Assembly (NCBI RefSeq): GCF_902652985.1
Contig: NC_047018.1
Location: 50,654,001 to 50,718,000 of the forward strand
From: Pecten maximus
Lineage: Eukaryota
DNA length: 64,000 nt
Direction: 5' to 3'
Shown here: piece after piece, positions 10,160 to 63,300 of the stretch
How positions within the stretch are numbered: the first letter of the stretch is position 1
How the letters are laid out: every line of letters starts with the position of its first letter
Translations under genes and position numbers: made by a program
Notes under the pieces: generated by a model
The model's input: the letters and a program-made list of their open reading frames with translations, nothing else
Told to the model about the DNA's origin: nothing
Databases searched by the model: none

Positions 10160-12272
10160 ACTAGATTTGATCAAGATCAAAACACGGGATTTCCAACTAG
10201 AAAATGATCGCAGACATGTTCTCATTCTGACGAACGCTTTTGTACGTTTTACCTACGAGTTCTCTTCGTTTTCTCTTCGCTTTCCTTCTTTAACCAATCT
10301 TTAAAATAACATTTTCTTTCACATACGAAGAAAATAAACCGTTTAAAATAATTTGAAATTTTCGATTTTGTATCATTTGACCTCCGTGAATCGTGTATCT
10401 CATACCTTGTATCGTGTTTACTGTACTGTGAATCGTGTATCCCGTACCTTGTATCGTGTTTACTGTACTGTGAATCGTGTATCTCGTACCGTGTTTCGTG
10501 TTTACTGTATTGTGAATCCCGTCCATGTATCATGTTTCCCGTATTGTATAATGTATCAAGTAACATGTATCGTGTATCACATACCGTGTATCCTGTAGTG
10601 TGTATACCGTACATTGTACCTTGTATCGTGTTTACTGAACCGTAAATCGTGTATCTCGTACCTTGTATCGTGATCATGTTTGTCATACCGTGTATCGTGT
10701 TTACTGAACCGTATATCGTGTATCCCTTACAACGTATCGTGTATCCCGTAACGTGTATTGTGTATACTGTACCGTGTATCTCGTACCAAGACCGTGTATC
10801 TCGTATCAAGTATCGTGTATACCGTACAGTGTATCGTGTATCTAGTACCATGTATCATGCATACCGTACCTTGTATCTCGTACCAAGTATTGTGTATACC
10901 GTTCCGTGTTTCGTGTGTACTGTACCGTATATAGTGTAGCTCACTCCGTGTATCGTGTTTACTGTATCGTATATCGAGTATCGAGCATTTTCTTCTATAG
11001 ATGATCAAAATAAACAGATTTTAAAAGAATTTAAAATTTTCGTTTTTTGGTCATTTGACCTCGGTGACCTTGAATGAAGGTCAAGGTCAGTGAAAAGCAA
11101 TCGACTTTGTAGCCCTTTATACAAGCTATCACTGTGCCAAATATCAAATCTGTATGTGTAAAGATAAAGGAGTAAACAGAAATTAAGTGCATTTTGGGAC
11201 AAATTTGAATTTTGGCGGGAAAACCAACATTTTTCAAAGTGCCATTTCTACGTCATTTTTCATCGCACGACCATAAAACTTGCACCGTTTGTCTTCATTA
11301 ATCATGCACTTCGTAATGCAATTAAAAAAATAACTCATTTTGAATTTTGAATTTTTGACCTTGACTTGACCTCGCGCTTAGACCTTGACCTTGACAAATT
11401 TTCTGATAACATATTTAAGAGAAAAGTGAGCCCCACCAATGTTCTACAAGAGGCATTGATTGTTCAAGGGAAAAAACGAACAGACAAAGAACCTGATTCA
11501 AAAGAAGTTTTGTTTTATTTTATTTTTTTGGCTTATTTGACCTTGAATGAAGTTCAAGGTCATTGAAAAATAACTTCTTTTGTAGCCACTCTTACGTTCT
11601 ATGGTTGTGCCAAATATCAAGTCTGTATGTGTTTAAATGAAGGAGCTGAAAAAAATTTAGGCATTTTTGCTAGATTTTTGAATTTTGGCGGGGAAAACTT
11701 TGAAATTTTCAAAGTGCCATATCTCCGTCATTTTTCATTCGATCACTAAATTTTTTTCACATTCCAACTCAGTGGTCCATGCTCTTTCATTTGTTATTGT
11801 ACAGTTAACTCGATTAGAGAATTTTATTTTTGACCTTACATTCAACCCATAGCGAGGTCATGACCTTGACACTTTTTCTGATAACATGGCTGAGAAAACG
11901 TTAGCCCCGACAACGATCTGCATGACACACCGAGCGAGAATGAAATAGAACGATCGTGTATGAAGTTATGGTCGTTCAAAGAAAAATCTGTGTTTTGACC
12001 TGTGACCTTGACCTTTGGACTAATGATCACCAAAATGGCAGACAAATCACCAGTTCGGTTGTTCGGTATCATGTACTGTAATACAAACGTTTTATCTGTG
12101 TGCGTTTTTGCTAGAAAGTGTTCACAGCAAGTGTTAAGAATAATAAGAATAATAAGAAAAAACATAACAATAACAATAGTGATTTCCATCCGAAATGGAA
12201 ATCCCTAATAATAATAAAAAGAAAAAACATAACAATAACAATAGGAATTTCCATCCGAAATGGAAATCCCTA
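10160..12272. mobile_element. Non-autonomous HINE/DINE-like (Helentron-type) element with internal satellite
   Basis: Subterminal IR GGGATTTCC (10186-10194) / GGAAATCCC (12197-12205). Terminal hairpin gatttccat-ccgaa-atggaaatc, AATAAG microsatellite, TGACCTTG-rich internal subrepeats and a duplicated terminus. Family assignment is by structure only. Confidence 0.6.
10385..10985. repeat. 7-bp (TATCGTG-like) satellite with a 42-bp higher-order period
   Basis: Repeated gtatcgt/gtatctc/gtaccgt heptamers. 42-bp units start at 10388, 10430 and 10472. Confidence 0.9.
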
Positions 12273-14256: not shown

Positions 14257-14453
14257 AAGTATATACACATCGGTAGTGGTATCCAGGTACTCATTAATCA
14301 GTTCATGTACACGTCGTTGGTATCCAGGTACCCATTAATTACTTCATGTGCATGTCGGCGTTATCCAGGTACTCATTAATTACTTCATGTTCACGTTGAT
14401 GGTTTCCAGGTACTCATTAATCAGTTCATGTACACGTCGGTGGTATCCAAGTA
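14257..14453 (-). repeat. Same 41-bp repeat (~5 units including the coding copy) at the 3' end of gene B
   Basis: Units at 14380-14420, 14339-14379, 14298-14338 and ~14257-14297 lie downstream of the stop. Confidence 0.92.
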
Positions 14454-14489
14454 GTCTTTGATCATGTTGTAGCAGGATTGGTACTGGTC
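14421..14489 (-). CDS. Gene B last coding exon
   Basis: [22 protein letters not shown]. 69 nt. Confidence 0.9.
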   Translation of the reverse strand, partial: DQYQSCYNMIKDYLDTTDVYMN

Positions 14490-51720: not shown

Positions 51721-53771
51721 CCGTTATGATAACTGTCTGTCATTTGTGATGCGCGGTAAACTACAGTATATATTAAGTCTAGTTGAAAACGTCACTTTTG
51801 TCCACGTAGGACCCTAAGGGGTGGGGACTTTACATTTCCAATAAAAATGGCTGGTCTCTAGTCATGAAAAGTTACTCAAAATTTCAGTGGGAAATCGTTT
51901 CATTGTTTCTTAGAGAAGTTGAAGAGGTAACCTGTTTACGAACTGACGATGCACGACACATGACGACGGACAAAATGCTATTAGAATTAGTCACTTGAGA
52001 CTTCTTTAATGAAAAATTACAATATTCTTATAACCCAGTTAGCTGTTTAAGGCGAATATTCAGTGCAATTTCCTGTTAGCCTTTATGTAGAATATTAATT
52101 GATCATACGCTTGTCAGTTATCGTGTAAGCATCAGTTCAATTTCAACAATCTTGTATTGCTTTTCAATAAATCAAATGGTTGACTACAGACAAAGCCTAT
52201 GTAAATCCTTCCAAATTATTACAACAAAATTAGCATTGACATGTATGCAGTGGTATCCAGTATTACAAGTAAGAGGGGATACTCCAATTTATTAAAAAAT
52301 GTAAAAGAAATTTATTACATCATTGATGTTCATACCATTGATGCAGATTTTCTGGTGAGTTGCTACGCAAATTCCGAGGGCTACAGTTCTTGTTTGTAAA
52401 CATGTCGACCATTTATCCAATGGAAAGTCAAGACAATTCGTCTTAAAATCTGCAAATCATGTATAAATTGGAAGATACCCCGGACAGAACCTTGTTGGTC
52501 TACTGCGTTTACTTCCGATGAAAAAAAAAGTCAGTTGATACTCGTTATTTTTATTCACAAAGATAATCTTTCAATCTTTGTAAATCTTTCCCTTTATTCC
52601 CTAGCATCGAGTTATAACCTAACTTTGAAAAATAAACATGATAATAGAAAATGGAAAAAAAATATTTGAATGTTGAACACACCGTTATAACAATTATAAG
52701 TAATTGATGTTTTTTTTTTTTTAATATGACAACATGTAATCACGGATTTTTTTCCTTGGTCTAACATTGATGTGAATTAACAAATACATTCCTATAACAC
52801 TGTTTTGACGTATACGAATAGTTGGAAATAAAAGGTAAAGAAAATTTAAAAATCAAATATGACATTCAGCAATTTACAATAAGTAAAATTGATGTATATA
52901 CATTGTAAATCAATGTAACAAGTATAAGCAGGGTTATCAACATGGAAATATAACAGTATCGGAAAAACGTAGTTCTTACTCCAGTGAGAGTAGTGATATA
53001 AAAGTATATTTAGCGCAAGTAGAACATGATTATTGGTAGTGATTTACCTTATAAAGACGGTCATCGTTTATATTTGTATAATAAGATATGAGGCAATGTT
53101 ACTTGGCTTAAAACCTGTAATGCAGCATCGCTCAGGATAAACTTGATGAAAAGCCGGTCAGCACATTTCGTTTAATTCTGATAAAAAATTACAAGTTAAA
53201 TAAAATGAATGTGAATAAGATTAAATATCTATTAAGATATATTGATAGAAACGTTCATCTGAGAGCAACAAATTACAAACACTGACAAAAAGTGATAGGT
53301 CAAACATCAGTTGTGTTAATAATTCTATAAAAATGTAATTGGCTTATGGTTTTATGAGCAACATTTTGTCATCTGATTGAATACATGACTTAGTTAAATG
53401 TTCCTCTGTATAACTAACAACACAATTACTTCCTAACGATAGGAGCGAGATGCATGATAATTAATGGATAAAACAATCAGGTTATGTATATGTGAACAGA
53501 TTGGTTGTCGTCGCGTCCTTGACAAAACAAATGTTAACCTATAGGATTCAGATATTTACAAGATAAAATGTTACAATCACCACAGCAAGCTAAAGTATAT
53601 AAATAGTTTCCTTGGATGATTCAGCATTTTCACTTCATTGTTAAAACTTAATACAGCTGTAACATATCGCTGTTTACTACGGAAACAATTCTAGAGTATG
53701 ATTCTTCGGTAAACTATTAAAGCGAAAGCAGTACATTTAAAAACTTTCCTTATAGTCTGTTTAAAATACAT

Positions 53772-55076
53772 GTTTTCAAGTACACGGCGATGGTATCCAG
53801 GTACTCGTTGAGCAGTTGATGTACACGTCAGTGGTATCCAGGTAATGCTTAATCAGTTCATGCACACGCTAATGGTTTCCAGGTACTCATTAATCTGTAC
53901 AACTACATGTCAATGGTATCCAGGTACTCATTAATCAGTTAATGTACACGTCGGCGGTATTCAGGTACTCATTAATCAGTTCATGTACACGTCGGTGGTA
54001 TCCATGTACTCATTAATCAGTTCATGTTCACGTCGGTGGTATCCAGGTGTTCATTAATCAGTTCATGTACACGTCGGTGGTATCCATGTACGCATTAATC
54101 AGTTCATGTACACGTCGGTGGTATCCATGTACTCATTAATCAGTTCATGTACACGTCGGTGGTATCCAGGTACTCATTAATCAGTTCATGTACACGTCGG
54201 TGGTATCCAGGTACTCATTAATCAGTTCATGTACACGTCGGTGGTATCCAGGTACTTATAAATCAGTTCATGTACACGTCATTGGTATCCAGGTACTCGT
54301 TAATCAGTTGATGTACACGTCGGTGGTATCCAGGTACTCATAAATCAGTTCATGTACACGTCATTGGTATCCAGGTACTCGTTAATCAGTTCATGTATAC
54401 GTCGGCGATATCTAGGTACTCATTGATCAGTTCACGTACACGTTAGTGGTATACAGGTACTCATTAATCAGTTCATGTATACGTCGGTTGTATCAGGGTA
54501 CTCAATGATTAGTTCATCTACATGTCAGTGGTATCCAGGTATTCATTAATCAGTTCATGTATACGTCGGCGGTATTCATGTACTCATTAATCAGTTCATG
54601 TACACGTCGGTGGTATCCAGGTACTCATTAATCAGTTCATGTACACGTCGGTGGTATCCAGGTACTCATTAATCAGTTCATGTACACGTCGGTGGTATCC
54701 AGGTACTCATAAATCAATTCATGTACACGTCATTGGTATCCAGGTACTCGTTAATCAGTTCATGTATACGTCGGCGATATCTAGGTACTCATTGATCAGT
54801 TCACGTACACGTTAGTGGTATCCAGGTACTCATTGATCAGTTCATGTACACGTTAGCGGTATCCAGGTACTCATAAATCAGTTCATGTACACGTCAGTGG
54901 TATCCAGGTACTCATGAATCAGTTCATGTACACGTCAGTGGTATCCATGTTTTTATTAATCAGTTCATTTACATGTCGATGGTATCCAGGTACTCATTAA
55001 ACAGTTCATGTACACGTCGACGGTATCCAGGTACTCATTAATCAGTTCATGTACACGTCGGTGGTATCCAGGTAGT
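53772..55076 (-). repeat. 41-bp minisatellite (~31-32 units) derived from the terminal codons and stop of gene C
   Basis: Unit (minus strand) TTAATGAGTACCTGGATACCACCGACGTGTACATGAACTGA. Period 41, e.g. 54011 to 54052. Confidence 0.95.
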
Positions 55077-58000
55077 CTATGATGACGTTGTAGCAGTATT
55101 GGTACTGGTCCTGCATTTGAAATAATTTCATACTTATCGAAAATGCATAAGATACACACATTATGATCATTATAATTGCATAACAAATTAATGGGAAAGG
55201 GAAATTACTCTTCCATACCAGCTAAGCTAAGACTGGAAATTACAAAATAAGAAAAGATTCCGCGTCATCCAGTCAAGAACAAACGCGGATAATATGCCTC
55301 AATTGAGTAAACCACAAAGAAAGCAGAGGGCAAATGCAATAGAAACATTGATAAATGGAGAATGGAGTATCCCGGTAAGATAAGACTTTTATAATCAGTT
55401 TGATAGAAATATTAAACAGTAAGTCAATTCCCAATGCAATCAGGACCGCCATGAAAGTATCGATATTATCAACTGAAGTCAAAACAGTGTTCTTGGAGTA
55501 GTTGAAATGTCAATATACGTACAAAATTTATCACAAATGCTGGACGTCGCACAAGCAGCTGACGTGAAATCTGAAAGATATCTACTTCTTCGTCACTCTT
55601 CATTTGGTCTCGGGCATTACTGATACAACAGAACAGCCCGCTCTGGGAATAGCCATCACTGAAACATCAAAAGAGCATGAATGATATTATCATAATAAGC
55701 ACAGACTCAAAAGCTTAATGTCTTTCCTCCATATCCTCAACAACCGTCAATATCAAGAAGAATTTGATAACGTCTAACAAAAGTATATTATAGATAAATA
55801 TGAAGGTAAACTACATACCGACACATGACTATTGTTGTCTTGGTATCGTCCGATTTGCGTCTGCTGTCAATAAGTTCCAGTAGGTAAAGCAACATGGACG
55901 AATCCTTGGGGACTGATGATTCTCTACCCCATCCAGTCATATGGAACACTTTAATAGTGGTATTGAAGCTATTTTCCTGAAAGGAATCAATTCCATTTAG
56001 GAAAGACATATTATTTGCATGCAATGGGTAATGGCCATAACCAAAGATTGCAGACTGCGATTATAAGTATGATGGATAGGGATTTTCCACTTAAGGGGGG
56101 TGGGGGGCACAAAATGTTGTTAAAAAACGAAACTGTCTTTTCTGCAGGCTATGCCTTTTCAGACTCCTTCATATCAGAGAAATAAACATGTTCATTTATC
56201 AGTATTCAAGATAGCATATATTTAGCCAGAATTTTTGAAATCAGGATTCAACAAGACACATCAAAACTTAAGACACTACAAAACATCCATCTTACCGTGT
56301 TTTCTATTGCGATTTCTAGCAAAGCGACATTTGCTATTGTTGAAGACTTTCCTTTGTGTTCCAACGTAAAATTCCCGATGGATTTATCTTCACCTTCCCC
56401 TGGAAGCCAGTCCTACGATAGGTAGAATGCAATATCTTCTGATATGGTCATATACCAATATGTGTCAGGCAATACTAGACTTCTTGATAACTATTTTACA
56501 GAGTTCATTTCCTTAAACAGATGCCAGACAATATTTGCTTTTGTTTCATCACAACGAAAATGTTTTGGAGTATGACAGGCCCATCTCAAAAAACCATGTG
56601 TTGCTCCACTGTGACGTCACGAACAAATAATGTCACAGACTGTAACGTCAATGTAATCAAGAAAAGTCTTTCAAAAATAACATGTCGTAATGAAAGCTAA
56701 TTTTGATGGTATTCAATAATTTGTTATGTCTATGCATTCATGTGACAAGTTTACGTCAGTATAATGAATTAACCCCATATTAATTTGATGTTACATAGGT
56801 ACTTTGTAAGATTTTATACCTTTCCGGTTGTAATTTTGTAACGTTTTAAATGAAATGGTTGTTAAGTCAATTACGTAATGTTAATGAAAACCACTGTCAC
56901 CAACCTGCAGTTTGAAATGATTCTATGATACCAATATGAACAGATGAAATTACAGTTTTTTAAATAAAGTGCACCTCGAGCTTCTTCGTTGCGTTACAAT
57001 TGTATGGAAATACACTTACAATGTCGTCCGGATCGATGATGACAATTGTTTGACAGTTGTGCTCCATTATCATCGTCAAAAAATCCACCACGGTGTCCTC
57101 CAGAGGAGTCTGTGTGACGATGTACCCAGTTTTGGATGTATAGGACTAGGTCAAAGGAAAACGGAATAATTGCTTGCATGTGAATGAAAGGTTGATTACA
57201 TGTGGGAAGCAATGTAAGAGTGATCACTAGGTATGTGTACTGGTTTCATGTGGTAATACTGTCACAGACATTTAGTGAAGTAATCATAGAGGTAGACCCA
57301 ACATAAAATCCTTCAGGACTTCAGTATGAAAAATGTTAACGTTAAGATTGACTCTTTCACAACATCTCTAAATAATCTCATAGCACACTTTTTTTTATTC
57401 GTATCAGCATGGAGATATACCACTAGTTCCCTTATCGTTGCGTAATGCATATCCTCCGTTATATCATTGAATGGTGGGGAAAGGTGACCAAGTACAAGAT
57501 TTGATCTAAAATATCACCCGTAATCACTTTTTAACGAGCAAGTTCTTTGATTCTGATTAACTTACAGACATACATAACACACACATACTAATTAATCCAT
57601 TTCAACAAGGTGAAACAAATGCCACATAATACGCATATTACTTACTGGCACTGACACGGCATTTATGTAGTCCGTTCTACAGTCAGTATATGATCGAAGG
57701 TACGCCCTGAACTTGTCAACTGAACAGAACCAGAGGAAAACATCAATCACAATATTTCCTTTCCTTTAACAATTTCTGATAATTCATATGAAGTTAAGAA
57801 GTCGAATTTTAATCATACATGGTAGTCTATGACTGGTTGTGTAATGTAGAGGTTTTATGTTTTAAAAACATGCAATTCATCACTACAATTGTTTAATTAT
57901 TGTACATTTCCATTGCAATTATACTCTGTTTCACAAAACTCGTTTTAAATTTGCTTCAGATTTAGGGTAAAACACGAAAAAATTTAACTACCGTAAAATA

Positions 58001-58227
58001 CTTTAATTTCAATGGTGATTGTTCAAGGAAGACGTCATTTGACGAGAGAATTTTGTGAGTTTGAATACGTTTGCCAAACATTGCTTCATGTTAATAGAGT
58101 TTTGATTGGAAAGAGGTTATTTTTTACCTGCAACGACAGATAAGGTTCTGTTCTTCAACTTGTTTGATGGCAGTAAGGCGGCTCTGTAGTTTGTCTCATT
58201 GTAAGCTGGTTTCATAGTTTGTGTCAG
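55042..58227 (-). CDS. Gene C intact PTP D2 exons (58128-58227, 57646-57719, 57020-57145, 56296-56412, 55819-55976, 55523-55658, 55042-55110)
   Basis: All seven exons match gene B in length, have canonical splice sites and contain no stops. An ATG at 58215 would give 255 aa. Expression is unknown. Confidence 0.55.
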
Positions 58228-61160
58228 CTAAATGAAACGTTTGTTGCAAAATCATTGAGTGATATCTTTGTAGATATCTTTTTATGTAAACTGCAAGTAA
58301 AATACACGTATTGATATAGAGACCCTTTTCTTATGATGTAGAAAAATAACATAATTTTACGTTCTAGAAGTCTATATTTCAGCAACAGGTTTATTATCAG
58401 AATTCTATTACAGAAAATGCCAATTGTATTAATAGTAAATTTTCTCTTGCAATTGTATTGATATCAAACGGGAATACTCTATATAGAATTAGAGAGTACC
58501 TGGTATTCCTTTCTTAGCTTTGTTTGGTTCGTGGGGCCGCCATTTCAGAGAGCAGTAAGTGTCGCGTGGTACTTCATTCTTGGAATCAGGGTGTCTGGCA
58601 TATCGAAGGCTTCTATAAGGAGCTAGTGTACAGCTATGTATTGTTCCTATATAAATGAATGAATCAGTATTACTGGCATTTAAAGTTTCATAATTTCTAC
58701 ACGAACTTCAATGTTATAGGTTTCATCAAAAGATAATCATAGGGCCAGGTGTATCGTGTGTGTTGAAATTGCACAACATATTTCTTTATTATGTTATTTT
58801 TTATGATTCTATCTTTGTCACATGTACATGCAATGACAAATGTTTAAATAACTTATTTTCTTGCAATTTTTCGTAAGTATGCATTAGGTGTTCATCAGAA
58901 TCTATTATAAAATCTGCATGAATACTGGAGTGCATTTTCTACACCTGGGATGTAAAGATGAGAATAATAATTTCGTTTAGTAACATCGTTGTTTTTTTTT
59001 ATTATACGACATTTCAACAGATGTAAGATCTTACCAGAAAAGGCATCAAAGACATTATTTATATATATGTTGACGATCTTTTAATCGAAAAACAGGTGGG
59101 TTGATCATGTCGATTCATATGTTACCAAAATACACGAGTTTAAAGTTTTTCAACTCTTCAAAAACAACCAATTACCTCGATCTTTAATTAAAGCAATGCC
59201 AACCGGGACTATTGAAAAAATAAGCTATATGAATTTTTAATATCTAGCAAGTAACATTCTTGCACTCGTTCTGGTGTAGCTATTTGTTATCAATGGTCTA
59301 GTTGTCATTATCACGATTTTCGTGAACAATGTCGAGTACTGACGGAACAAAATACACAAGGTTCGAGAGACATAATCTCATGATATACAAATGTAGTCAA
59401 CATACTTATTTCTATTGAAGATTATTTTATATCCAGTTGATACCTCCTGAGCAAATAGATGAACTCTACATAGATATACGAATGGCTAGAAATATAAAAG
59501 AAAATATTTTGAAATGAGACATTTGCTTAAAGTATTCAAAATATTATCAAATTTTATTTAAACAATATAGAGTTCATCACTGTGAAACTTACAACAGTTT
59601 GAACCATATTGATCCTATCCTTTCGCATGGTTTTTATGTACTGCATTACGTCAATGTGTCCGGACTCCTTCCCATATTCCAGGAGAGCGTCTAGGGCAAT
59701 ACATGTTCCTGTTATCGCATGCCAGCACTGCCAAAGGGTTCAGGCATTAATTAATGAATTGAACAACGTCAGAACTAACATAAAACAGATGATGCGATAT
59801 CGTCAAAACTCAATAACATAATAACAATACAATAGCAAAGCGAATGAATAAATAAAAAAAAATAGGAAAACGTCGCAAGCCCCTTTAAAACGACGAGCAT
59901 GAAGATATACTGAATCCTGGAAGAGTTCATTTGGGTCTGGAGTCCCGTGGTCGGGCCATGTGGTATAGTGGAACTGATGTATCTGACGTACTGACTTCGT
60001 CTGAATGAGTAAATTTGATATTCAGAATTATTGATATCATTTATAGTCATACATATATGAACACATTTAGTTTGGCTTTTCTAACTATTGCTATTCCTGT
60101 TTTATTTATACCTTCTTTTCTGTAACTGTAAGGTCCCGGATGATGTAGAAGGCATACGACCTTTCCCTGTCCATACCTGTGGTCAGTACCGGGATAAAGA
60201 GTTTGGACACCTTAACTACACGGCCACCGCGGCCGGTCTGACATGGAAGGGCCAAAATTTTAAAACACACCAAATCATAACGTCGTCGGTTTTAAAAATA
60301 CCTAATATTCCGGTCGCTTCATTTTTTGGCTTGGTAATTGGGCAATTATATGTAAATTGGATTTATTTCCGTGACCACAACAGATAATGTTTATCGTCCT
60401 GTTTGCATAAAATGTGTCGTTTTATCACTCTTCAGTAAAGGTATGGTTCCTAAAATTCGTGTTGGTAAAGTTCGTACAAGTAAAATTTCGTTTGAAATGT
60501 AACCTCTATACATTAATAAGATAGTAATCCATTTCGAGTCAAAATGGCAGTGTATTGTTTAGGTATTTTCAATGATATCAGACGGTTTTCCTCCCCCCCC
60601 CCCTCTCAAATGTCAATTGTGAAAATATAATTTTTCCTAGTGATAACAATTATTTATATTTCCTTATTCAGTTACCTTTATAGAATAAAGTATTGTTTAA
60701 AATAATTAGCTCCTTAACTTCAATAATGCCGCTGTTCTAATCGAGATAACTTAATTCCATGATCGAAATATGTCTGATTGAGACATTTCACTCACTTCTG
60801 TAGTATATTTTGATCTCACTAATGGCCATCAGCTCTCCCAGATCAACACGCCACCAGACCGTTGTTTTACCAGGCGCCGTATGTGTACAACAACCTCTAT
60901 TCAAGATTGTATCTATCAGTTATCCACAACTTTTCTTGCTACATAATTATCTCCCCCAAACTCACTACTTTGTTCTGTTTGTTTATTCACGGCGACGTTA
61001 CCTGCAATAAATGAAGAATAAGTTGATACCTGATAAATTAACGATGGTTCTGACATAACTGGTCACATTATCTTTCCTTACATTAAGATATGATAAATAA
61101 TTTTACCTTAACCGCTATTGCAATATTATATTTTTTTATTACGCCAATCTATATGCCACA

Positions 61161-61182
61161 CCCCCCCCCCCCCCCCCCCCCC
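61161..61182 (+). repeat. Poly-C tract (22 nt)
   Basis: Read directly from the sequence. Confidence 0.95.
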
Positions 61183-62874
61183 GCCGACTGTATTTGTAAC
61201 TCAGTGCACATATGATTGAACTTTGCTCATCAGCGAGTTCAATTTGTCATATTCTATGCATAGACAGAGCGTTTAACTATTTATAACAACATAAATATAA
61301 TCTAATAGATAAAAAAAACTAATATCATGAAATAAATTGATACCAACATGTATGTATAACCATGTAACTTCTTACTTAGATCCAAAGTACAAGGACAAAA
61401 ATGCAATCAATATCAACAATTGGTTAAAGATATCTTTGTTTTTGTACGTTTCTAATTGGAATGTAATTAATGATCATTTCATAGATGGCAATAAACTTTT
61501 TTCTTCAAATAAGTATTATATACATTTATAGAAGTATATGCCTGCGGTATTTCACAACAATATTAGTGGTTGTATGACTGAGATTTAATATTATAATGAA
61601 CCTGAAAATAGTCCCAAGAAATTATTCATGCAATGTTAATCTCCCTTCTGTAGGAGCTCAAAAGTAGTAGCAAAAAAGATATTGTTAGTTTTTGAAATAA
61701 TTACACGATGAAAGAGCCGACTATCCTGAAAGTGATTACTGTTGGCTATTACGAAACAAAACATCAACGTATTGAAACACTCATTACTGACCTCTCCAAT
61801 CAGGAAGTAATATAACCTACCACGTATTTAGTAGTATTATCTACATACATGTACATCATTGTGTATGTACTAGTTTCATTTCAGATATGACAGTATTAAA
61901 TATGTAGAAAAAGATCAGGATCAAACATCTTTCTACAATACTCTTTCTCGTCGCCATTCTCAGTTTAATGACGACTCCACATCAACAAGGAAGTTAAATG
62001 TATGTTATTTAATGATCCTGTGTTCGATTTTCAATAGAAGTTGGCACAAGGTGTATTTTTCCAAACAAAATTACATACTGGTTCCGGGACACTGCCTTCA
62101 ACTCAACAGCTATGTTAACCTTATACTACGCTGTTTTGTGTGCACCTTTCTGTTAAATATCCAATGCGTATGTACTAGGTTTAAATGCCTTCAATACGTC
62201 GATCCACAGGTACACATATGTAATTAGTATTCTAACGAAGTGCTGGCAGTATTAGGAGTGCATAAATTTAACGCTATTCAACATTTACAGTATCATATCA
62301 AGTTTTACTGAAAAGCAATGTCACGAACAGTCAGGGTCAATTTGAGTAGAGGTCTCTTTGTGCTAACTGGTGACTTCCTGACAGAACAACATCCGGGAGG
62401 CCCGTCGCGTGCCATCAAGAGCAATTAGGGTAATGTGTCTTGCCAAAGGCGATTGGACTCACATATGCATACTTGTTGTCATTTTAGCGACTGGCTCGGT
62501 TATGTTTTTTTCTTCATGTCCTGCATTCAGTATGTGACACAGGCACCCACCGTTCGCTATTTACCTTCTGAATAGCTTGTACAATACATTGCAGCCAGTT
62601 ATTCGACACACTGCAACATTATACCTACACACAAGGTGATGGAGTTCTTTCCGTATAGAGTTTACCTCTGAACGCAAACATTTTCAATTTCTCTGCAGGC
62701 AAGATGGGTAAATTAACACATTAAAGATATTGTATTTCTATCTTTGAACATACAAAAAACCTGAGCACAAGTTATCCAACATATGATAAGATAATTCCAT
62801 AGAAAATAACATAACAACATACATTTTGCAAGATGGCATATTTACATAATTTTAGAGAGAAAGAGAGACAATGA

Positions 62875-63300
62875 TTTTGTGTCTTCTATTAATGACCATG
62901 TCTTTATGACGTCTTTGTCTTCCTGTCTATGATCATGTCTTTGTGTCGACCATGTCGTTATGTCGTCTATTCATGACCATGTCTTTGTGTCGTCTATTTA
63001 AGACCATGTCATTGTGACGTCTTTTTATGGCCATGTCTTTATGTCTTCTATTTATATTAATGTCGTCATATCGTCTATTTATGACCATGTCTTTGTGTGG
63101 TATGTTTATGACAATGTCTTTGTGTCGTCTTTTAATTAACATGTCATCGTGACGTCTATTTATGACCATGTCTTCATGACATATATGTATGACCATGTCT
63201 GTTTGTGTCTTTATTGATGAACATGTATGTGGCGTCTATATATGATCATGTCGTTCATTTCTGATACTATATGTCGTCTATTGATGACCATGTCCCTATG
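62875..63300. repeat. 27-bp minisatellite
   Basis: Units like atgaccatgtctttgtgtcgtctattt. Produces a 9-aa periodic ORF on the minus strand. Confidence 0.85.

What the first reader, a model, noticed from the sequence alone, without database searches (positions are those of the whole stretch)
53772..55110. The receptor's own C-terminal phosphotyrosine motif plus stop codon is amplified into a 41-bp tandem array (~31-32 copies)
Seen: the repeat unit is the final codons and stop of the gene ([43 protein letters not shown]) plus an 8-nt spacer, and the real coding end is the first unit. Downstream units encode variant tails ([50 protein letters not shown]). Established: pY-x-N is the Grb2 SH2 motif, and PTPalpha uses a C-terminal pYxN tail to bind Grb2. 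Inference: slippage or unequal crossover between the coding unit and any downstream unit would swap in a variant signalling tail with a stop already in place. The array could therefore act as a cassette library for the effector motif, and it also makes 3'UTR length a VNTR.
Basis: partly seen in the sequence, partly recalled or inferred. Interest (0 to 1): 0.85.

Follow-up and report, generated by a model that had tools for sequence, protein, structure and literature searches.

The report
Stop-codon-spanning minisatellite behind scallop phosphatase genes
The 41-base repeat is real, but it is an ordinary, neutrally decaying minisatellite that grew out of the last 41 coding bases of a scallop receptor phosphatase gene (here a dead copy), not a library of swap-in signalling tails.

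Summary
Observation confirmed. Window 53763-55074 (minus strand) holds 32 head-to-tail 41-bp units. Unit 1 is the end of the last exon (tail [10 protein letters not shown], stop, 8 nt).

Interpretation not supported.
- The genome is Pecten maximus. The same array follows the last exon of about 20 paralogous lectin/EGF/tandem-phosphatase receptor genes, with 2 to 36 units each.
- The tail in the coding position is almost invariant across 19 paralogs and in four scallop genera. Y, N and the stop are always kept, and pN/pS is 0.07.
- The 277 downstream units drift almost neutrally (pN/pS 0.45-0.77). Their Y, N and stop codons are no better kept than other codons.
- Closest copies differ in unit number (36/34, 13/10, 32/19/31), but their first 4-5 units stay collinear and the coding unit is untouched.
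- The gene in front of this array is a pseudogene, with about 620 codons deleted and two premature stops.

New points.
- The "stop + spacer" 11 nt matches the 11 coding bases just upstream, so the unit is wholly derived from coding sequence. The duplication junction re-creates the stop.
- An unrelated 69-bp stop-spanning array sits behind a distant paralog.
- One locus shows flank discordance across its array.

No RNA data and no DNA from other species could be obtained. Best reading: a 3'-end VNTR, of low to moderate interest.

The parts
55045..55110 (-). Last coding exon of 'gene C' (22 sense codons, end of the inactive D2 phosphatase domain plus the C-terminal tail ...[11 protein letters not shown]). 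It is preceded by a CAG acceptor.
   Evidence: tblastn with P0019 residues 1120-1141, 95% identity
55042..55044 (-). Stop codon TGA. It lies at the junction between the first and second repeat periods.
55075..55085 (-). 11 coding bases (codons V-I-I-D here, M/V-I-K-D in the paralogs) homologous to the 'stop + 8-nt spacer' of every unit. The repeat register starts here.
   Evidence: 8-9 of 11 identical in most paralogs, 6 of 11 in this decayed copy; null P(>=9) = 0.0003
55034..55074 (-). Unit 1: last 30 coding nt, stop and 8 nt. It is identical to the family consensus.
53763..55033 (-). Units 2-32, non-coding copies with 0-11 mismatches each. Units 29-32 at the distal end are the most decayed. 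Units 7-12 and 16-23 form a higher-order duplication of about 11 units.
54952..54957 (-). AATAAA hexamer created at the unit 3/4 junction, 84 nt after the stop. It is shared with the two closest paralogous arrays and is a candidate early poly(A) signal (untested).
55523..58227 (-). Remaining D2 (pseudophosphatase) exons of gene C, with open frames. The penultimate exon 55523-55657 ends ...PAFVINF followed by a GT donor.
   Evidence: Pfam PF00102 on single exons
58497..58646 (-). D1-D2 linker exon carrying two in-frame stops (TAG 58625-58623, TGA 58547-58545). These mark gene C as a pseudogene.
59557..61957 (-). Rest of gene C: signal-peptide exon, first lectin exon, then directly a mid-D1 fragment. 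Homologues of P0019 residues 97-718 (rest of lectin, EGF stalk, TM, first half of D1) are missing.
   Evidence: the same deletion is present in the C394 copy
14276..14489 (-). Neighbouring intact gene ('gene B'): last exon 14489-14421 including the stop (...[11 protein letters not shown]), followed by a short, old version of the same 41-bp array (4 to 4.6 units).

Best explanation
This is a minisatellite (VNTR) at the 3' end of a scallop (Pecten maximus) receptor tyrosine phosphatase gene family.

Origin (inferred). In the single ancestor of a Pecten-specific clade of about 20 genes, a 41-nt piece of the last exon was duplicated in tandem. The piece covers the codons for (M/V)[13 protein letters not shown]. 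It begins with TGAT (inside the Met/Val-Ile codons), and the sequence after it begins with the TGA stop. This microhomology is typical of slippage-type duplication. It also means the junction re-creates a stop exactly after the final Asn, so the protein was unchanged and the duplication was tolerated.

Later history. The array was inherited by every gene duplicate (shown). It has grown and shrunk locally by slippage or unequal exchange, to 2-36 units (the mechanism is inferred). The coding-position unit is held by purifying selection on a PTPalpha-like C-terminal Y-x-N tail (shown). All downstream units decay at roughly the neutral rate, with CpG transitions prominent (shown).

This copy. The 32-unit copy in the window sits behind a truncated pseudogene, so here it has no bearing on a signalling tail at all. 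Its likely consequences are by-products: variable length of the 3' flank or 3'UTR, and homology that allows occasional ectopic exchange between neighbouring paralogs.
For: Array and register.

Family-wide presence: about 20 arrays, 11 on C4, 8 on C394 and 1 on C7. 19 of the 20 start with a paralog's last exon; the remaining one abuts an assembly gap.

Single origin: the array-bearing genes form one clade (SH-aLRT 96), sister to an Argopecten expansion, and the array-less L053 gene lies outside it. The distal boundary unit (YLDTIAVY[L/W]KT) is shared by 8 arrays, with a near-variant (YLDTIGVYWKT) in a ninth, and complex variant units are shared between clades.

The stop predates the array: array-less paralogs L050-L054 end ...DVY[MI]N TGA followed by unrelated sequence.

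Selection contrast: coding units have 19 synonymous and 5 non-synonymous differences, pN/pS 0.07. The 277 downstream units have pN/pS 0.45, or 0.77 without the CpG codons. Fisher p = 3.6e-5.

No special retention of Y, N or stop in the downstream units.

VNTR behaviour: unit counts of 36 vs 34, 13 vs 10 and 32 vs 19 vs 31 in the closest copies, with collinear proximal units. Higher-order internal duplication is seen.

Tail conservation and homology.

Pseudogene status of the host gene.

No Rfam family matches.

Three of the five non-synonymous coding-unit variants are shared with downstream units of the same array (M>V in L039, M>I in L040 and L046). Some exchange or duplication involving unit 1 has therefore happened, in an unknown direction.

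All family members kept at least 2 units. A second, independently bounded 69-bp array spans the stop of a distant paralog. This could hint at a mutational predisposition or a function rather than pure chance.

Three units fold somewhat better than shuffles as RNA (z = -2.8).

The allelic status of the C394 copies is inferred from 0.6-4% divergence. It is not proven.
Confidence: 0.8

Rival explanations
1. Cassette library. Downstream units would be a reservoir of alternative C-terminal tails, each with its own stop, swapped into the coding position by slippage or unequal crossover to diversify effector binding.
For: A crossover between unit 1 and unit k would mechanically give a chimeric coding tail with a stop in place. 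The M>V (L039) and M>I (L040/L046) coding variants are also present in downstream units of the same arrays. Copy number does change between close copies.
Against: The coding tail is nearly invariant in 19 paralogs and across four scallop genera, with Y, N and stop always kept. pN/pS of the coding unit is 0.07. Downstream units include many tails that would destroy the motif, with Y>H/C/N/stop, N>D/K and lost stops. Only 194 of 277 keep Y..N*, and 68 of 277 keep the exact tail. There is no extra conservation of Y, N or stop. Units 2-4 are collinear in winC, L036 and L045, so unit 1 has not been exchanged since they split. Private synonymous variants of unit 1 are mostly absent downstream. The host gene here is a pseudogene. 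M/I/V at +1 is ordinary family variation.
Confidence: 0.04
2. Selected 3'UTR element array. The repeated units would be multivalent binding sites for an RNA-binding protein or small RNA, or a structured element, that tune stability, localisation or translation of the receptor mRNAs. Copy number would be a regulatory dial.
For: The array has been retained (at least 2 units) behind all of the roughly 20 clade members. Most arrays lack a poly(A) hexamer, and a positionally recurring ATTAAA/AATAAA lies about 580-680 nt beyond the array end in many paralogs, so the array probably sits in the 3'UTR (inference). Three units fold with z = -2.8. Precedent: the 40-bp VNTR in the 3'UTR of SLC6A3/DAT1 is reported to affect expression (PMC8502797, PMC4472402).
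Against: Units diverge from their consensus by 8.7% per site. That is the same order as synonymous sites of the coding units, with pS 0.154 against 0.167. No sub-motif of the unit is conspicuously conserved. Copy number ranges from 2 to 36 among paralogs, and the short arrays are old and decayed. The array is equally long behind a pseudogene. There is no Rfam match. There are no expression data.
Confidence: 0.1
3. Recombination substrate. The arrays would matter mainly at the DNA level, as blocks of homology shared by neighbouring paralogs. These blocks would promote non-allelic exchange and so help the birth-and-death turnover of the receptor cluster. This is compatible with a neutral origin.
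For: At L037/L041 the two flanks of the array have different histories. The upstream flank groups with clade II (with L033/L034, and next to clade III; support 99-100). The downstream flank nests inside clade I next to L043. The tree keeping clade I intact is rejected for the downstream flank (AU p = 0.008). Arrays lie at the 3' boundary of every gene in a cluster with a repeated (II, III, I) gene order.
Against: There is only one discordant case. The tested group was chosen after seeing a tree, so the p-value is optimistic. The breakpoint is not mapped inside the array. Replacement of the L033/L034 flank by an insertion would also give discordance.
Confidence: 0.2
4. Assembly artefact: a collapsed or expanded repeat produced by the assembler.
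For: Long-read assemblies can mis-size arrays. One related small contig (C2028) is clearly error-ridden.
Against: About 20 separate arrays have distinct, internally consistent unit maps, and the proximal and distal units are shared between related loci. The window contains no N.
Confidence: 0.02

Closest known systems
3'UTR minisatellites / VNTRs, e.g. the 40-bp VNTR of human SLC6A3 (DAT1), 3-11 repeats (PMC4472402, PMC8502797)
   Same: Unit length is about 40 bp and the array lies directly downstream of a coding region. Copy number varies between close copies. Variant units are interspersed, and interior units turn over while the array ends are more stable and more decayed.
   Different: Here the unit is demonstrably derived from the gene's own last 41 coding bases, and the stop codon lies at a repeat junction. 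The array is shared by about 20 paralogs, with up to 36 units. Transcription and any effect on expression are untested.
C-terminal Tyr789 (Y-A-N-F-K) tail of vertebrate RPTPalpha/epsilon, a Grb2/Src/BCAR3 SH2 docking site (PMC7959691, citing den Hertog 1994)
   Same: The scallop tail ...[ST]-[DN]-V-Y-[MVI]-N aligns residue for residue with ...F-S-D-Y-A-N at the end of PTPalpha D2. Mussel relatives end ...S-[LM]-Y-A-N-[TI]. The top PDB match of the family is PTPalpha.
   Different: The scallop proteins stop right after the Asn, and D2 has lost the catalytic Arg (VMC-x5-Q). The ectodomain is an F5/8-type-C lectin plus an EGF stalk. Phosphorylation and SH2 binding are untested. This concerns the coding unit only, not the array.
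Silent-cassette diversification systems (e.g. pilE/pilS, vlsE, VSG; named from general knowledge)
   Same: Tandem, non-expressed variant copies lie next to an expressed copy.
   Different: There is no diversity at the expressed site, no conservation of functional residues in the silent copies, and no sign of directed conversion. The expressed tail is under purifying rather than diversifying selection.

Membership tests
Minisatellite / VNTR | Head-to-tail units of roughly 10-100 bp in an array | tested here: met
   32 units of 41 bp with 0% indels
Minisatellite / VNTR | Copy number differs between alleles or very close copies | tested here: met
   L037/L041 36 vs 34 units (flanks 96.5-99.4% identical). 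L040/L046 13 vs 10. winC/L045/L036 32/19/31. Allelic status is inferred; no population reads were available.
Minisatellite / VNTR | Interspersed variant units, with internal block duplications | tested here: met
   Unit maps. Units 7-12 and 16-23 form a duplicated block.
Minisatellite / VNTR | Units evolve without coding constraint | tested here: met
   Downstream pN/pS is 0.45-0.77 against 0.07 for coding units. Codon positions 1 and 3 are hit equally.
Silent-cassette library for an expressed tail | Different cassette variants occupy the expressed position in different alleles or paralogs | tested here: not met
   14 of 19 coding tails are identical. The rest differ by one conservative residue. 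Y, N and stop are kept in 19 of 19.
Silent-cassette library for an expressed tail | Silent copies keep the residues needed for function (Y, N, stop) better than neutral positions | tested here: not met
   Retention is 86.6%, 85.9% and 88.4%, against 86-95% for other codons.
Silent-cassette library for an expressed tail | Evidence of recent exchange between the expressed unit and the silent units | tested here: inconclusive
   Units 1-4 are collinear in winC, L036 and L045, and units 1-5 in L040/L046. However, the M>V and M>I coding variants are shared with downstream units in L039 and L040/L046.
RPTP alpha/epsilon-like C-terminal pY-x-N docking tail (coding unit only) | Y-x-N at the extreme C-terminus of D2, alignable to PTPalpha Y789 | tested here: met
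   HMMER alignment to 6uzt_A. Conserved in 4 scallop genera, mussels and ants.
RPTP alpha/epsilon-like C-terminal pY-x-N docking tail (coding unit only) | The Tyr is phosphorylated and binds the Grb2-type SH2 domain | not testable with these tools
   Needs biochemistry. The literature covers only the vertebrate protein.
3'UTR regulatory repeat | The array lies inside the mature transcript | not tested
There is only hexamer positions as a hint.

The most novel reading that the evidence does not exclude
Stop-spanning amplification of the terminal coding segment may be a recurrent, possibly favoured event in this receptor family. There are two independently bounded arrays (41 bp and 69 bp) in different clades. 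The retained arrays may act as 3'UTR dosage or localisation elements, and/or as recombination hotspots that drive birth-and-death turnover of the lectin-phosphatase receptor cluster.
Probability: 0.12. Interest if true: 0.55.

Novelty: new member of a known kind. Interest (0 to 1): 0.27.

Why it matters
As it stands, this is a clean worked example of how a minisatellite is born from coding sequence without harming the protein. A microhomology that includes the stop codon lets the duplication junction re-create the stop. The example also shows how such an array is carried through a gene-family expansion while selection protects only the unit in the coding position.

It removes a tempting but wrong reading (a programmable signalling-tail library) from the annotation of an interesting scallop receptor cluster.

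If the minority readings were true, the arrays would be handles for studying 3'UTR-length regulation or ectopic recombination in a fast-evolving candidate immune-receptor cluster of bivalves.

Tried and rejected

(3) Degenerate tail-plus-stop patterns searched in the genome. They suggested further arrays with periods of 69, 37 and 32 bp on C2, C8, C10 and C5. Inspection showed these are unrelated satellites or chance hits with no phosphatase exon.

(4) Contig C2028 looked like a second 69-bp array. It is an error-ridden duplicate of the L049 locus.

(5) The idea that the array consensus is 'pinned' by selection or by re-seeding from the coding unit. All arrays share one consensus, but fully consensus-identical units are few and lineage-specific. 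L038 and L031 have coding-unit synonymous changes that their arrays lack. A majority-rule consensus of old, independently decaying units explains the shared consensus.

(6) The idea that the stop codon was created by the duplication. This is rejected because array-less paralogs already stop right after Asn.

(7) Downstream units as alternative terminal exons. Each is preceded by AG but lacks a pyrimidine tract, and using one would delete part of the D2 helix. In the 69-bp array the pseudo-exon is out of frame. I did not pursue this further.

(8) A protein search with the plus-strand ORF through the array returned nothing.

(9) Literature searches found no description of this scallop receptor family or of stop-spanning minisatellites.

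(10) Joining the exons of gene C into a spliced protein was deliberately left out. Exons were searched one by one by reference, and database proteins such as P0019 were used as guides.
Full report
**1. The observation**

The window is AT-rich animal DNA (GC about 34%). Tandem Repeats Finder reports an array at 53775-55074 with period 41, 31.7 copies, 86% matches and no indels.

Read on the minus strand in strict 41-bp steps from 55074, there are 32 units down to 53763, and similarity ends abruptly after that. A 30-nt core pattern matches 26 times in the window with up to 3 mismatches, against 0 in 100 shuffles.

The last exon of a minus-strand gene starts at 55110 after a CAG acceptor and reads [22 protein letters not shown], with the stop at 55044-55042. 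Unit 1 (55074-55034) is the last ten sense codons, the stop and 8 nt.

**2. The gene and the organism**

The assembly has 918,306,378 bases in 3,983 contigs, and the window is C4:50654001-50718000. Proteins found with one D2 exon and their relatives are NCBI models from Pecten maximus. They lie on contigs of exactly the lengths of C4, C394 and C7 (52,693,527; 586,900; 46,316,487). Relatives come from Argopecten irradians, Mizuhopecten yessoensis and Ylistrum balloti.

The family consists of:
- a signal peptide,
- an F5/8-type-C lectin domain,
- a stalk of EGF-like repeats,
- a transmembrane segment,
- an active phosphatase domain D1,
- an inactive D2, in which VMC-x5-Q replaces C-x5-R.

Exons were searched singly by reference, and the database protein P0019 served as a guide for tblastn.

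That comparison shows three genes in the window.
- One gene has only its 5' part in the window (6704-28).
- One is a complete gene (47090-14421, 'gene B').
- The third is the gene in front of our array ('gene C', 61957-55042).

Gene C is a pseudogene:
- Homologues of P0019 residues 97-718 are missing. That covers the rest of the lectin, all EGF repeats, the TM segment and the first half of D1.
- The D1-D2 linker exon carries two in-frame stops, TAG at 58625-58623 and TGA at 58547-58545.
- Its D2 exons are still open.

**3. The array is a family trait**

A search of the whole genome with four units finds the same repeat at about 20 places. Eleven are on C4 (49.30-50.90 Mb), eight on the 587-kb contig C394 and one on C7.

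In 19 of the 20, the array begins with the last exon of a paralog. The exception abuts an assembly gap, which I left alone. Unit numbers are 2, 4, 4, 4, 7, 8, 9, 9, 10, 10, 12, 13, 15, 18, 19, 19, 31, 32, 34 and 36.

On a tree of D2 sequences, the array-bearing P. maximus genes form one species-specific clade (SH-aLRT 96). That clade is sister to an Argopecten-specific expansion. The nearest P. maximus gene outside it (L053) has no array.

Within the clade the most distal, decayed unit (YLDTIAVY[L/W]KT) is shared by eight arrays, with a near-variant (YLDTIGVYWKT) in a ninth. Multi-substitution variant units are shared between sub-clades. The array therefore existed, with several units, in the single ancestor gene and was copied along with each gene duplication.

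**4. How it arose**

The 11 coding bases just upstream of unit 1 read TGATTAAAGAC or TGATCAAAGAC in most paralogs. That is 8-9 of 11 identical to the 'stop + spacer' TGATTAATGAG of the units. Among 46,151 11-mers from the flanks, only 0.03% reach 9 matches.

So the unit is entirely derived from coding sequence, namely the last 41 nt of the open reading frame. The stop codon of the present gene corresponds to the TGA inside the (A/G)TG-AT codons of the next period.

Array-less paralogs (L050-L054) already end ...DVY[MI]N TGA followed by unrelated sequence. The stop therefore predates the array.

The duplicated segment starts with TGAT and is followed by TGA. This is the signature of a microhomology or slippage duplication (inference). 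It also explains why this register was tolerated: the junction re-creates a stop directly after the last Asn, leaving the protein unchanged.

**5. Test of the cassette idea**

*(a) The coding position.* Across 19 paralogs the coding unit has 19 synonymous but only 5 non-synonymous differences from the consensus.

| Set | n | pS | pN | pN/pS |
|---|---|---|---|---|
| Coding units | 19 | 0.167 | 0.011 | 0.07 |
| Downstream units | 277 | 0.154 | 0.069 | 0.45 |
| Downstream units, without the three CpG-bearing codons | 277 | 0.081 | 0.062 | 0.77 |

- Fourteen coding tails are exactly [10 protein letters not shown]. The others are VYIN (two), VYVN, YLYTT... and FLD....
- Tyr, Asn and the stop are kept in all 19.
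- In 40-odd family proteins from four scallop genera the tail is [DE]-x-[TS]-[DNE]-[VIL]-Y-[MVI]-N-COOH. Mussel relatives end ...S[LM]YAN[TI].
- HMMER aligns the tail end to end with ...FSDYAN of PTPalpha (6uzt_A), whose Y789 binds Grb2, Src and BCAR3 (PMC7959691).

The coding tail is thus an old, constrained docking motif.

*(b) The downstream units.*
- The contrast in synonymous versus non-synonymous counts with the coding units gives Fisher p = 3.6e-5.
- One CpG site alone accounts for 135 changes.
- Counted once per array, events per non-CpG site are 14.6, 9.6 and 13.9 for codon positions 1, 2 and 3. Positions 1 and 3 are equal, which is not a coding pattern.
- Amino-acid retention is Tyr 86.6%, Asn 85.9% and stop 88.4%, against 86-95% for the other non-CpG codons.
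- Many units have Y>H/C/N/stop, N>D/K, or no stop.

*(c) Exchange with unit 1.* In the three closest copies (winC, L036, L045) units 1-4 and the distal units are collinear, while the interior differs (32, 31 and 19 units). L037 and L041 differ by two single-unit indels (36 vs 34), and L040 and L046 by three units (13 vs 10). In every case the coding unit is untouched. Private synonymous changes of the coding unit (for example in L031 and L038) are absent from most of their downstream units. The only hint of exchange is that the conservative M>V (L039) and M>I (L040/L046) coding variants also occur in downstream units of the same arrays, and the direction is unknown.

*(d) This locus.* The host gene is dead.

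The one criterion I could not test is transcription.

**6. Is there any sign of function?**

Every array gives the same majority consensus (0-1 difference). This looked like constraint at first. However, units fully identical to the consensus are few and lineage-specific: 6 in winC from one amplified run, and 0 in its sister L036. Mean divergence from the consensus (8.7% per site) also matches synonymous divergence of the coding units. A majority consensus of old, independently decaying units simply recovers the ancestral unit.

Other checks:
- Rfam finds nothing.
- Three units fold as RNA with z = -2.8, through a quasi-palindrome around GTGTACAT. This is weak.
- Canonical poly(A) hexamers are absent from most arrays. 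An ATTAAA/AATAAA recurs about 580-680 nt beyond the array end in many paralogs, which suggests (inference only) that the arrays lie in 3'UTRs.
- In winC, L036 and L045 a mutation pair created AATAAA at the unit 3/4 junction (54957-54952), which might truncate the transcript early.

**7. Two side results**

*A second stop-spanning array.* A distant paralog (the P0028-type gene, C4:34.897 Mb, locus L049) has nine copies of a 69-bp unit. That unit also spans its stop codon but has different boundaries: tail, stop, about 13 nt, then 20 nt of the exon. On the protein tree it belongs to another, older clade, with array-less genes in between. It is therefore most simply an independent event.

*Flank discordance.* At L037/L041 the upstream flank groups with clade II, while the downstream flank nests inside clade I. 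The tree that keeps clade I intact is rejected for the downstream data (AU p = 0.008). The group was named after seeing a tree, so this p-value is optimistic. The result fits an ectopic exchange at or near the array.

**8. Comparison with known systems, and verdict**

By every feature I could test, the thing is a minisatellite/VNTR. The closest textbook analogue is the 40-bp 3'UTR VNTR of SLC6A3 (PMC4472402, PMC8502797).

It does not meet the defining features of a silent-cassette diversification system. The coding tail, not the array, is a member of the PTPalpha-type C-terminal Y-x-N tails by alignment. Its biochemistry is untested.

Novelty is modest: a new member of a known kind, with a neat origin story and a family-wide distribution.

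**Limits of this work**
- The allelic status of the C394 copies is inferred only from 0.6-4% divergence.

Noticed in passing
L049:3204-3858 (G000:C4:34896703-34897357): A distant paralog (ends ...DYLDTTEVYIN*) is followed by 9 copies of a 69-bp unit that also spans its stop codon but has different boundaries. On the D2 tree it sits in another clade, so it is probably an independent stop-spanning amplification.
   Followed up: partly
L037 / L041 (G000:C4:50631000-50638500; C394:58500-66000): The two flanks of this 36/34-unit array have different phylogenetic affinities: upstream with clade II, downstream nested in clade I (AU p = 0.008). This suggests an ectopic exchange between paralogs at or near the array.
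   Followed up: partly
window 55042-61957 (-) and L056 (G000:C394:262800-272799): Gene C and the C394 copy share the same internal deletion: signal peptide and first lectin exon joined almost directly to mid-D1. Only the window copy has the two premature stops (58625-58623, 58547-58545). The D2 exons remain open in both.
   Followed up: yes
G000:C4 50.526-50.708 Mb (L034, L035, L036, L037, window genes): The cluster shows a repeated gene order of sub-clades (II, III, I) twice in a row, i.e. a three-gene segmental duplication. Contig C394 carries a structurally different version with extra genes, either a haplotype or a paralogous segment.
   Followed up: partly
L057 (G000:C2028:1-5000): This small contig is an error-ridden, homopolymer-rich copy of the L049 locus. 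It is probably an unpolished haplotig left in the assembly.
   Followed up: partly
L058:3451-5088 (G000:C2:4829950-4831587) and L060 (G000:C8:13502500-13507000): These are unrelated minisatellites (69 bp x 23.7 copies, and a 32-bp array) that matched the degenerate tail pattern by chance. They illustrate how rich this genome is in minisatellites.
   Followed up: yes
window 10384-10982 and 62876-63252: Other tandem arrays in the window (7/21/42-bp units, and 27/54-bp units with an 87-aa repetitive minus-strand ORF) were not examined.
   Followed up: no
P0026 (Mizuhopecten yessoensis model, 922 aa): This gene model reads ...LDTTDM and then continues into 25 unrelated residues instead of ending ...DVYxN. 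It may be a mis-spliced model or an altered terminal exon in that species.
   Followed up: no
window 54952-54957 (-): An AATAAA hexamer is created by two substitutions at the unit 3/4 junction. It is conserved in the three closest arrays (winC, L036, L045) and could end transcripts 84 nt after the stop.
   Followed up: partly
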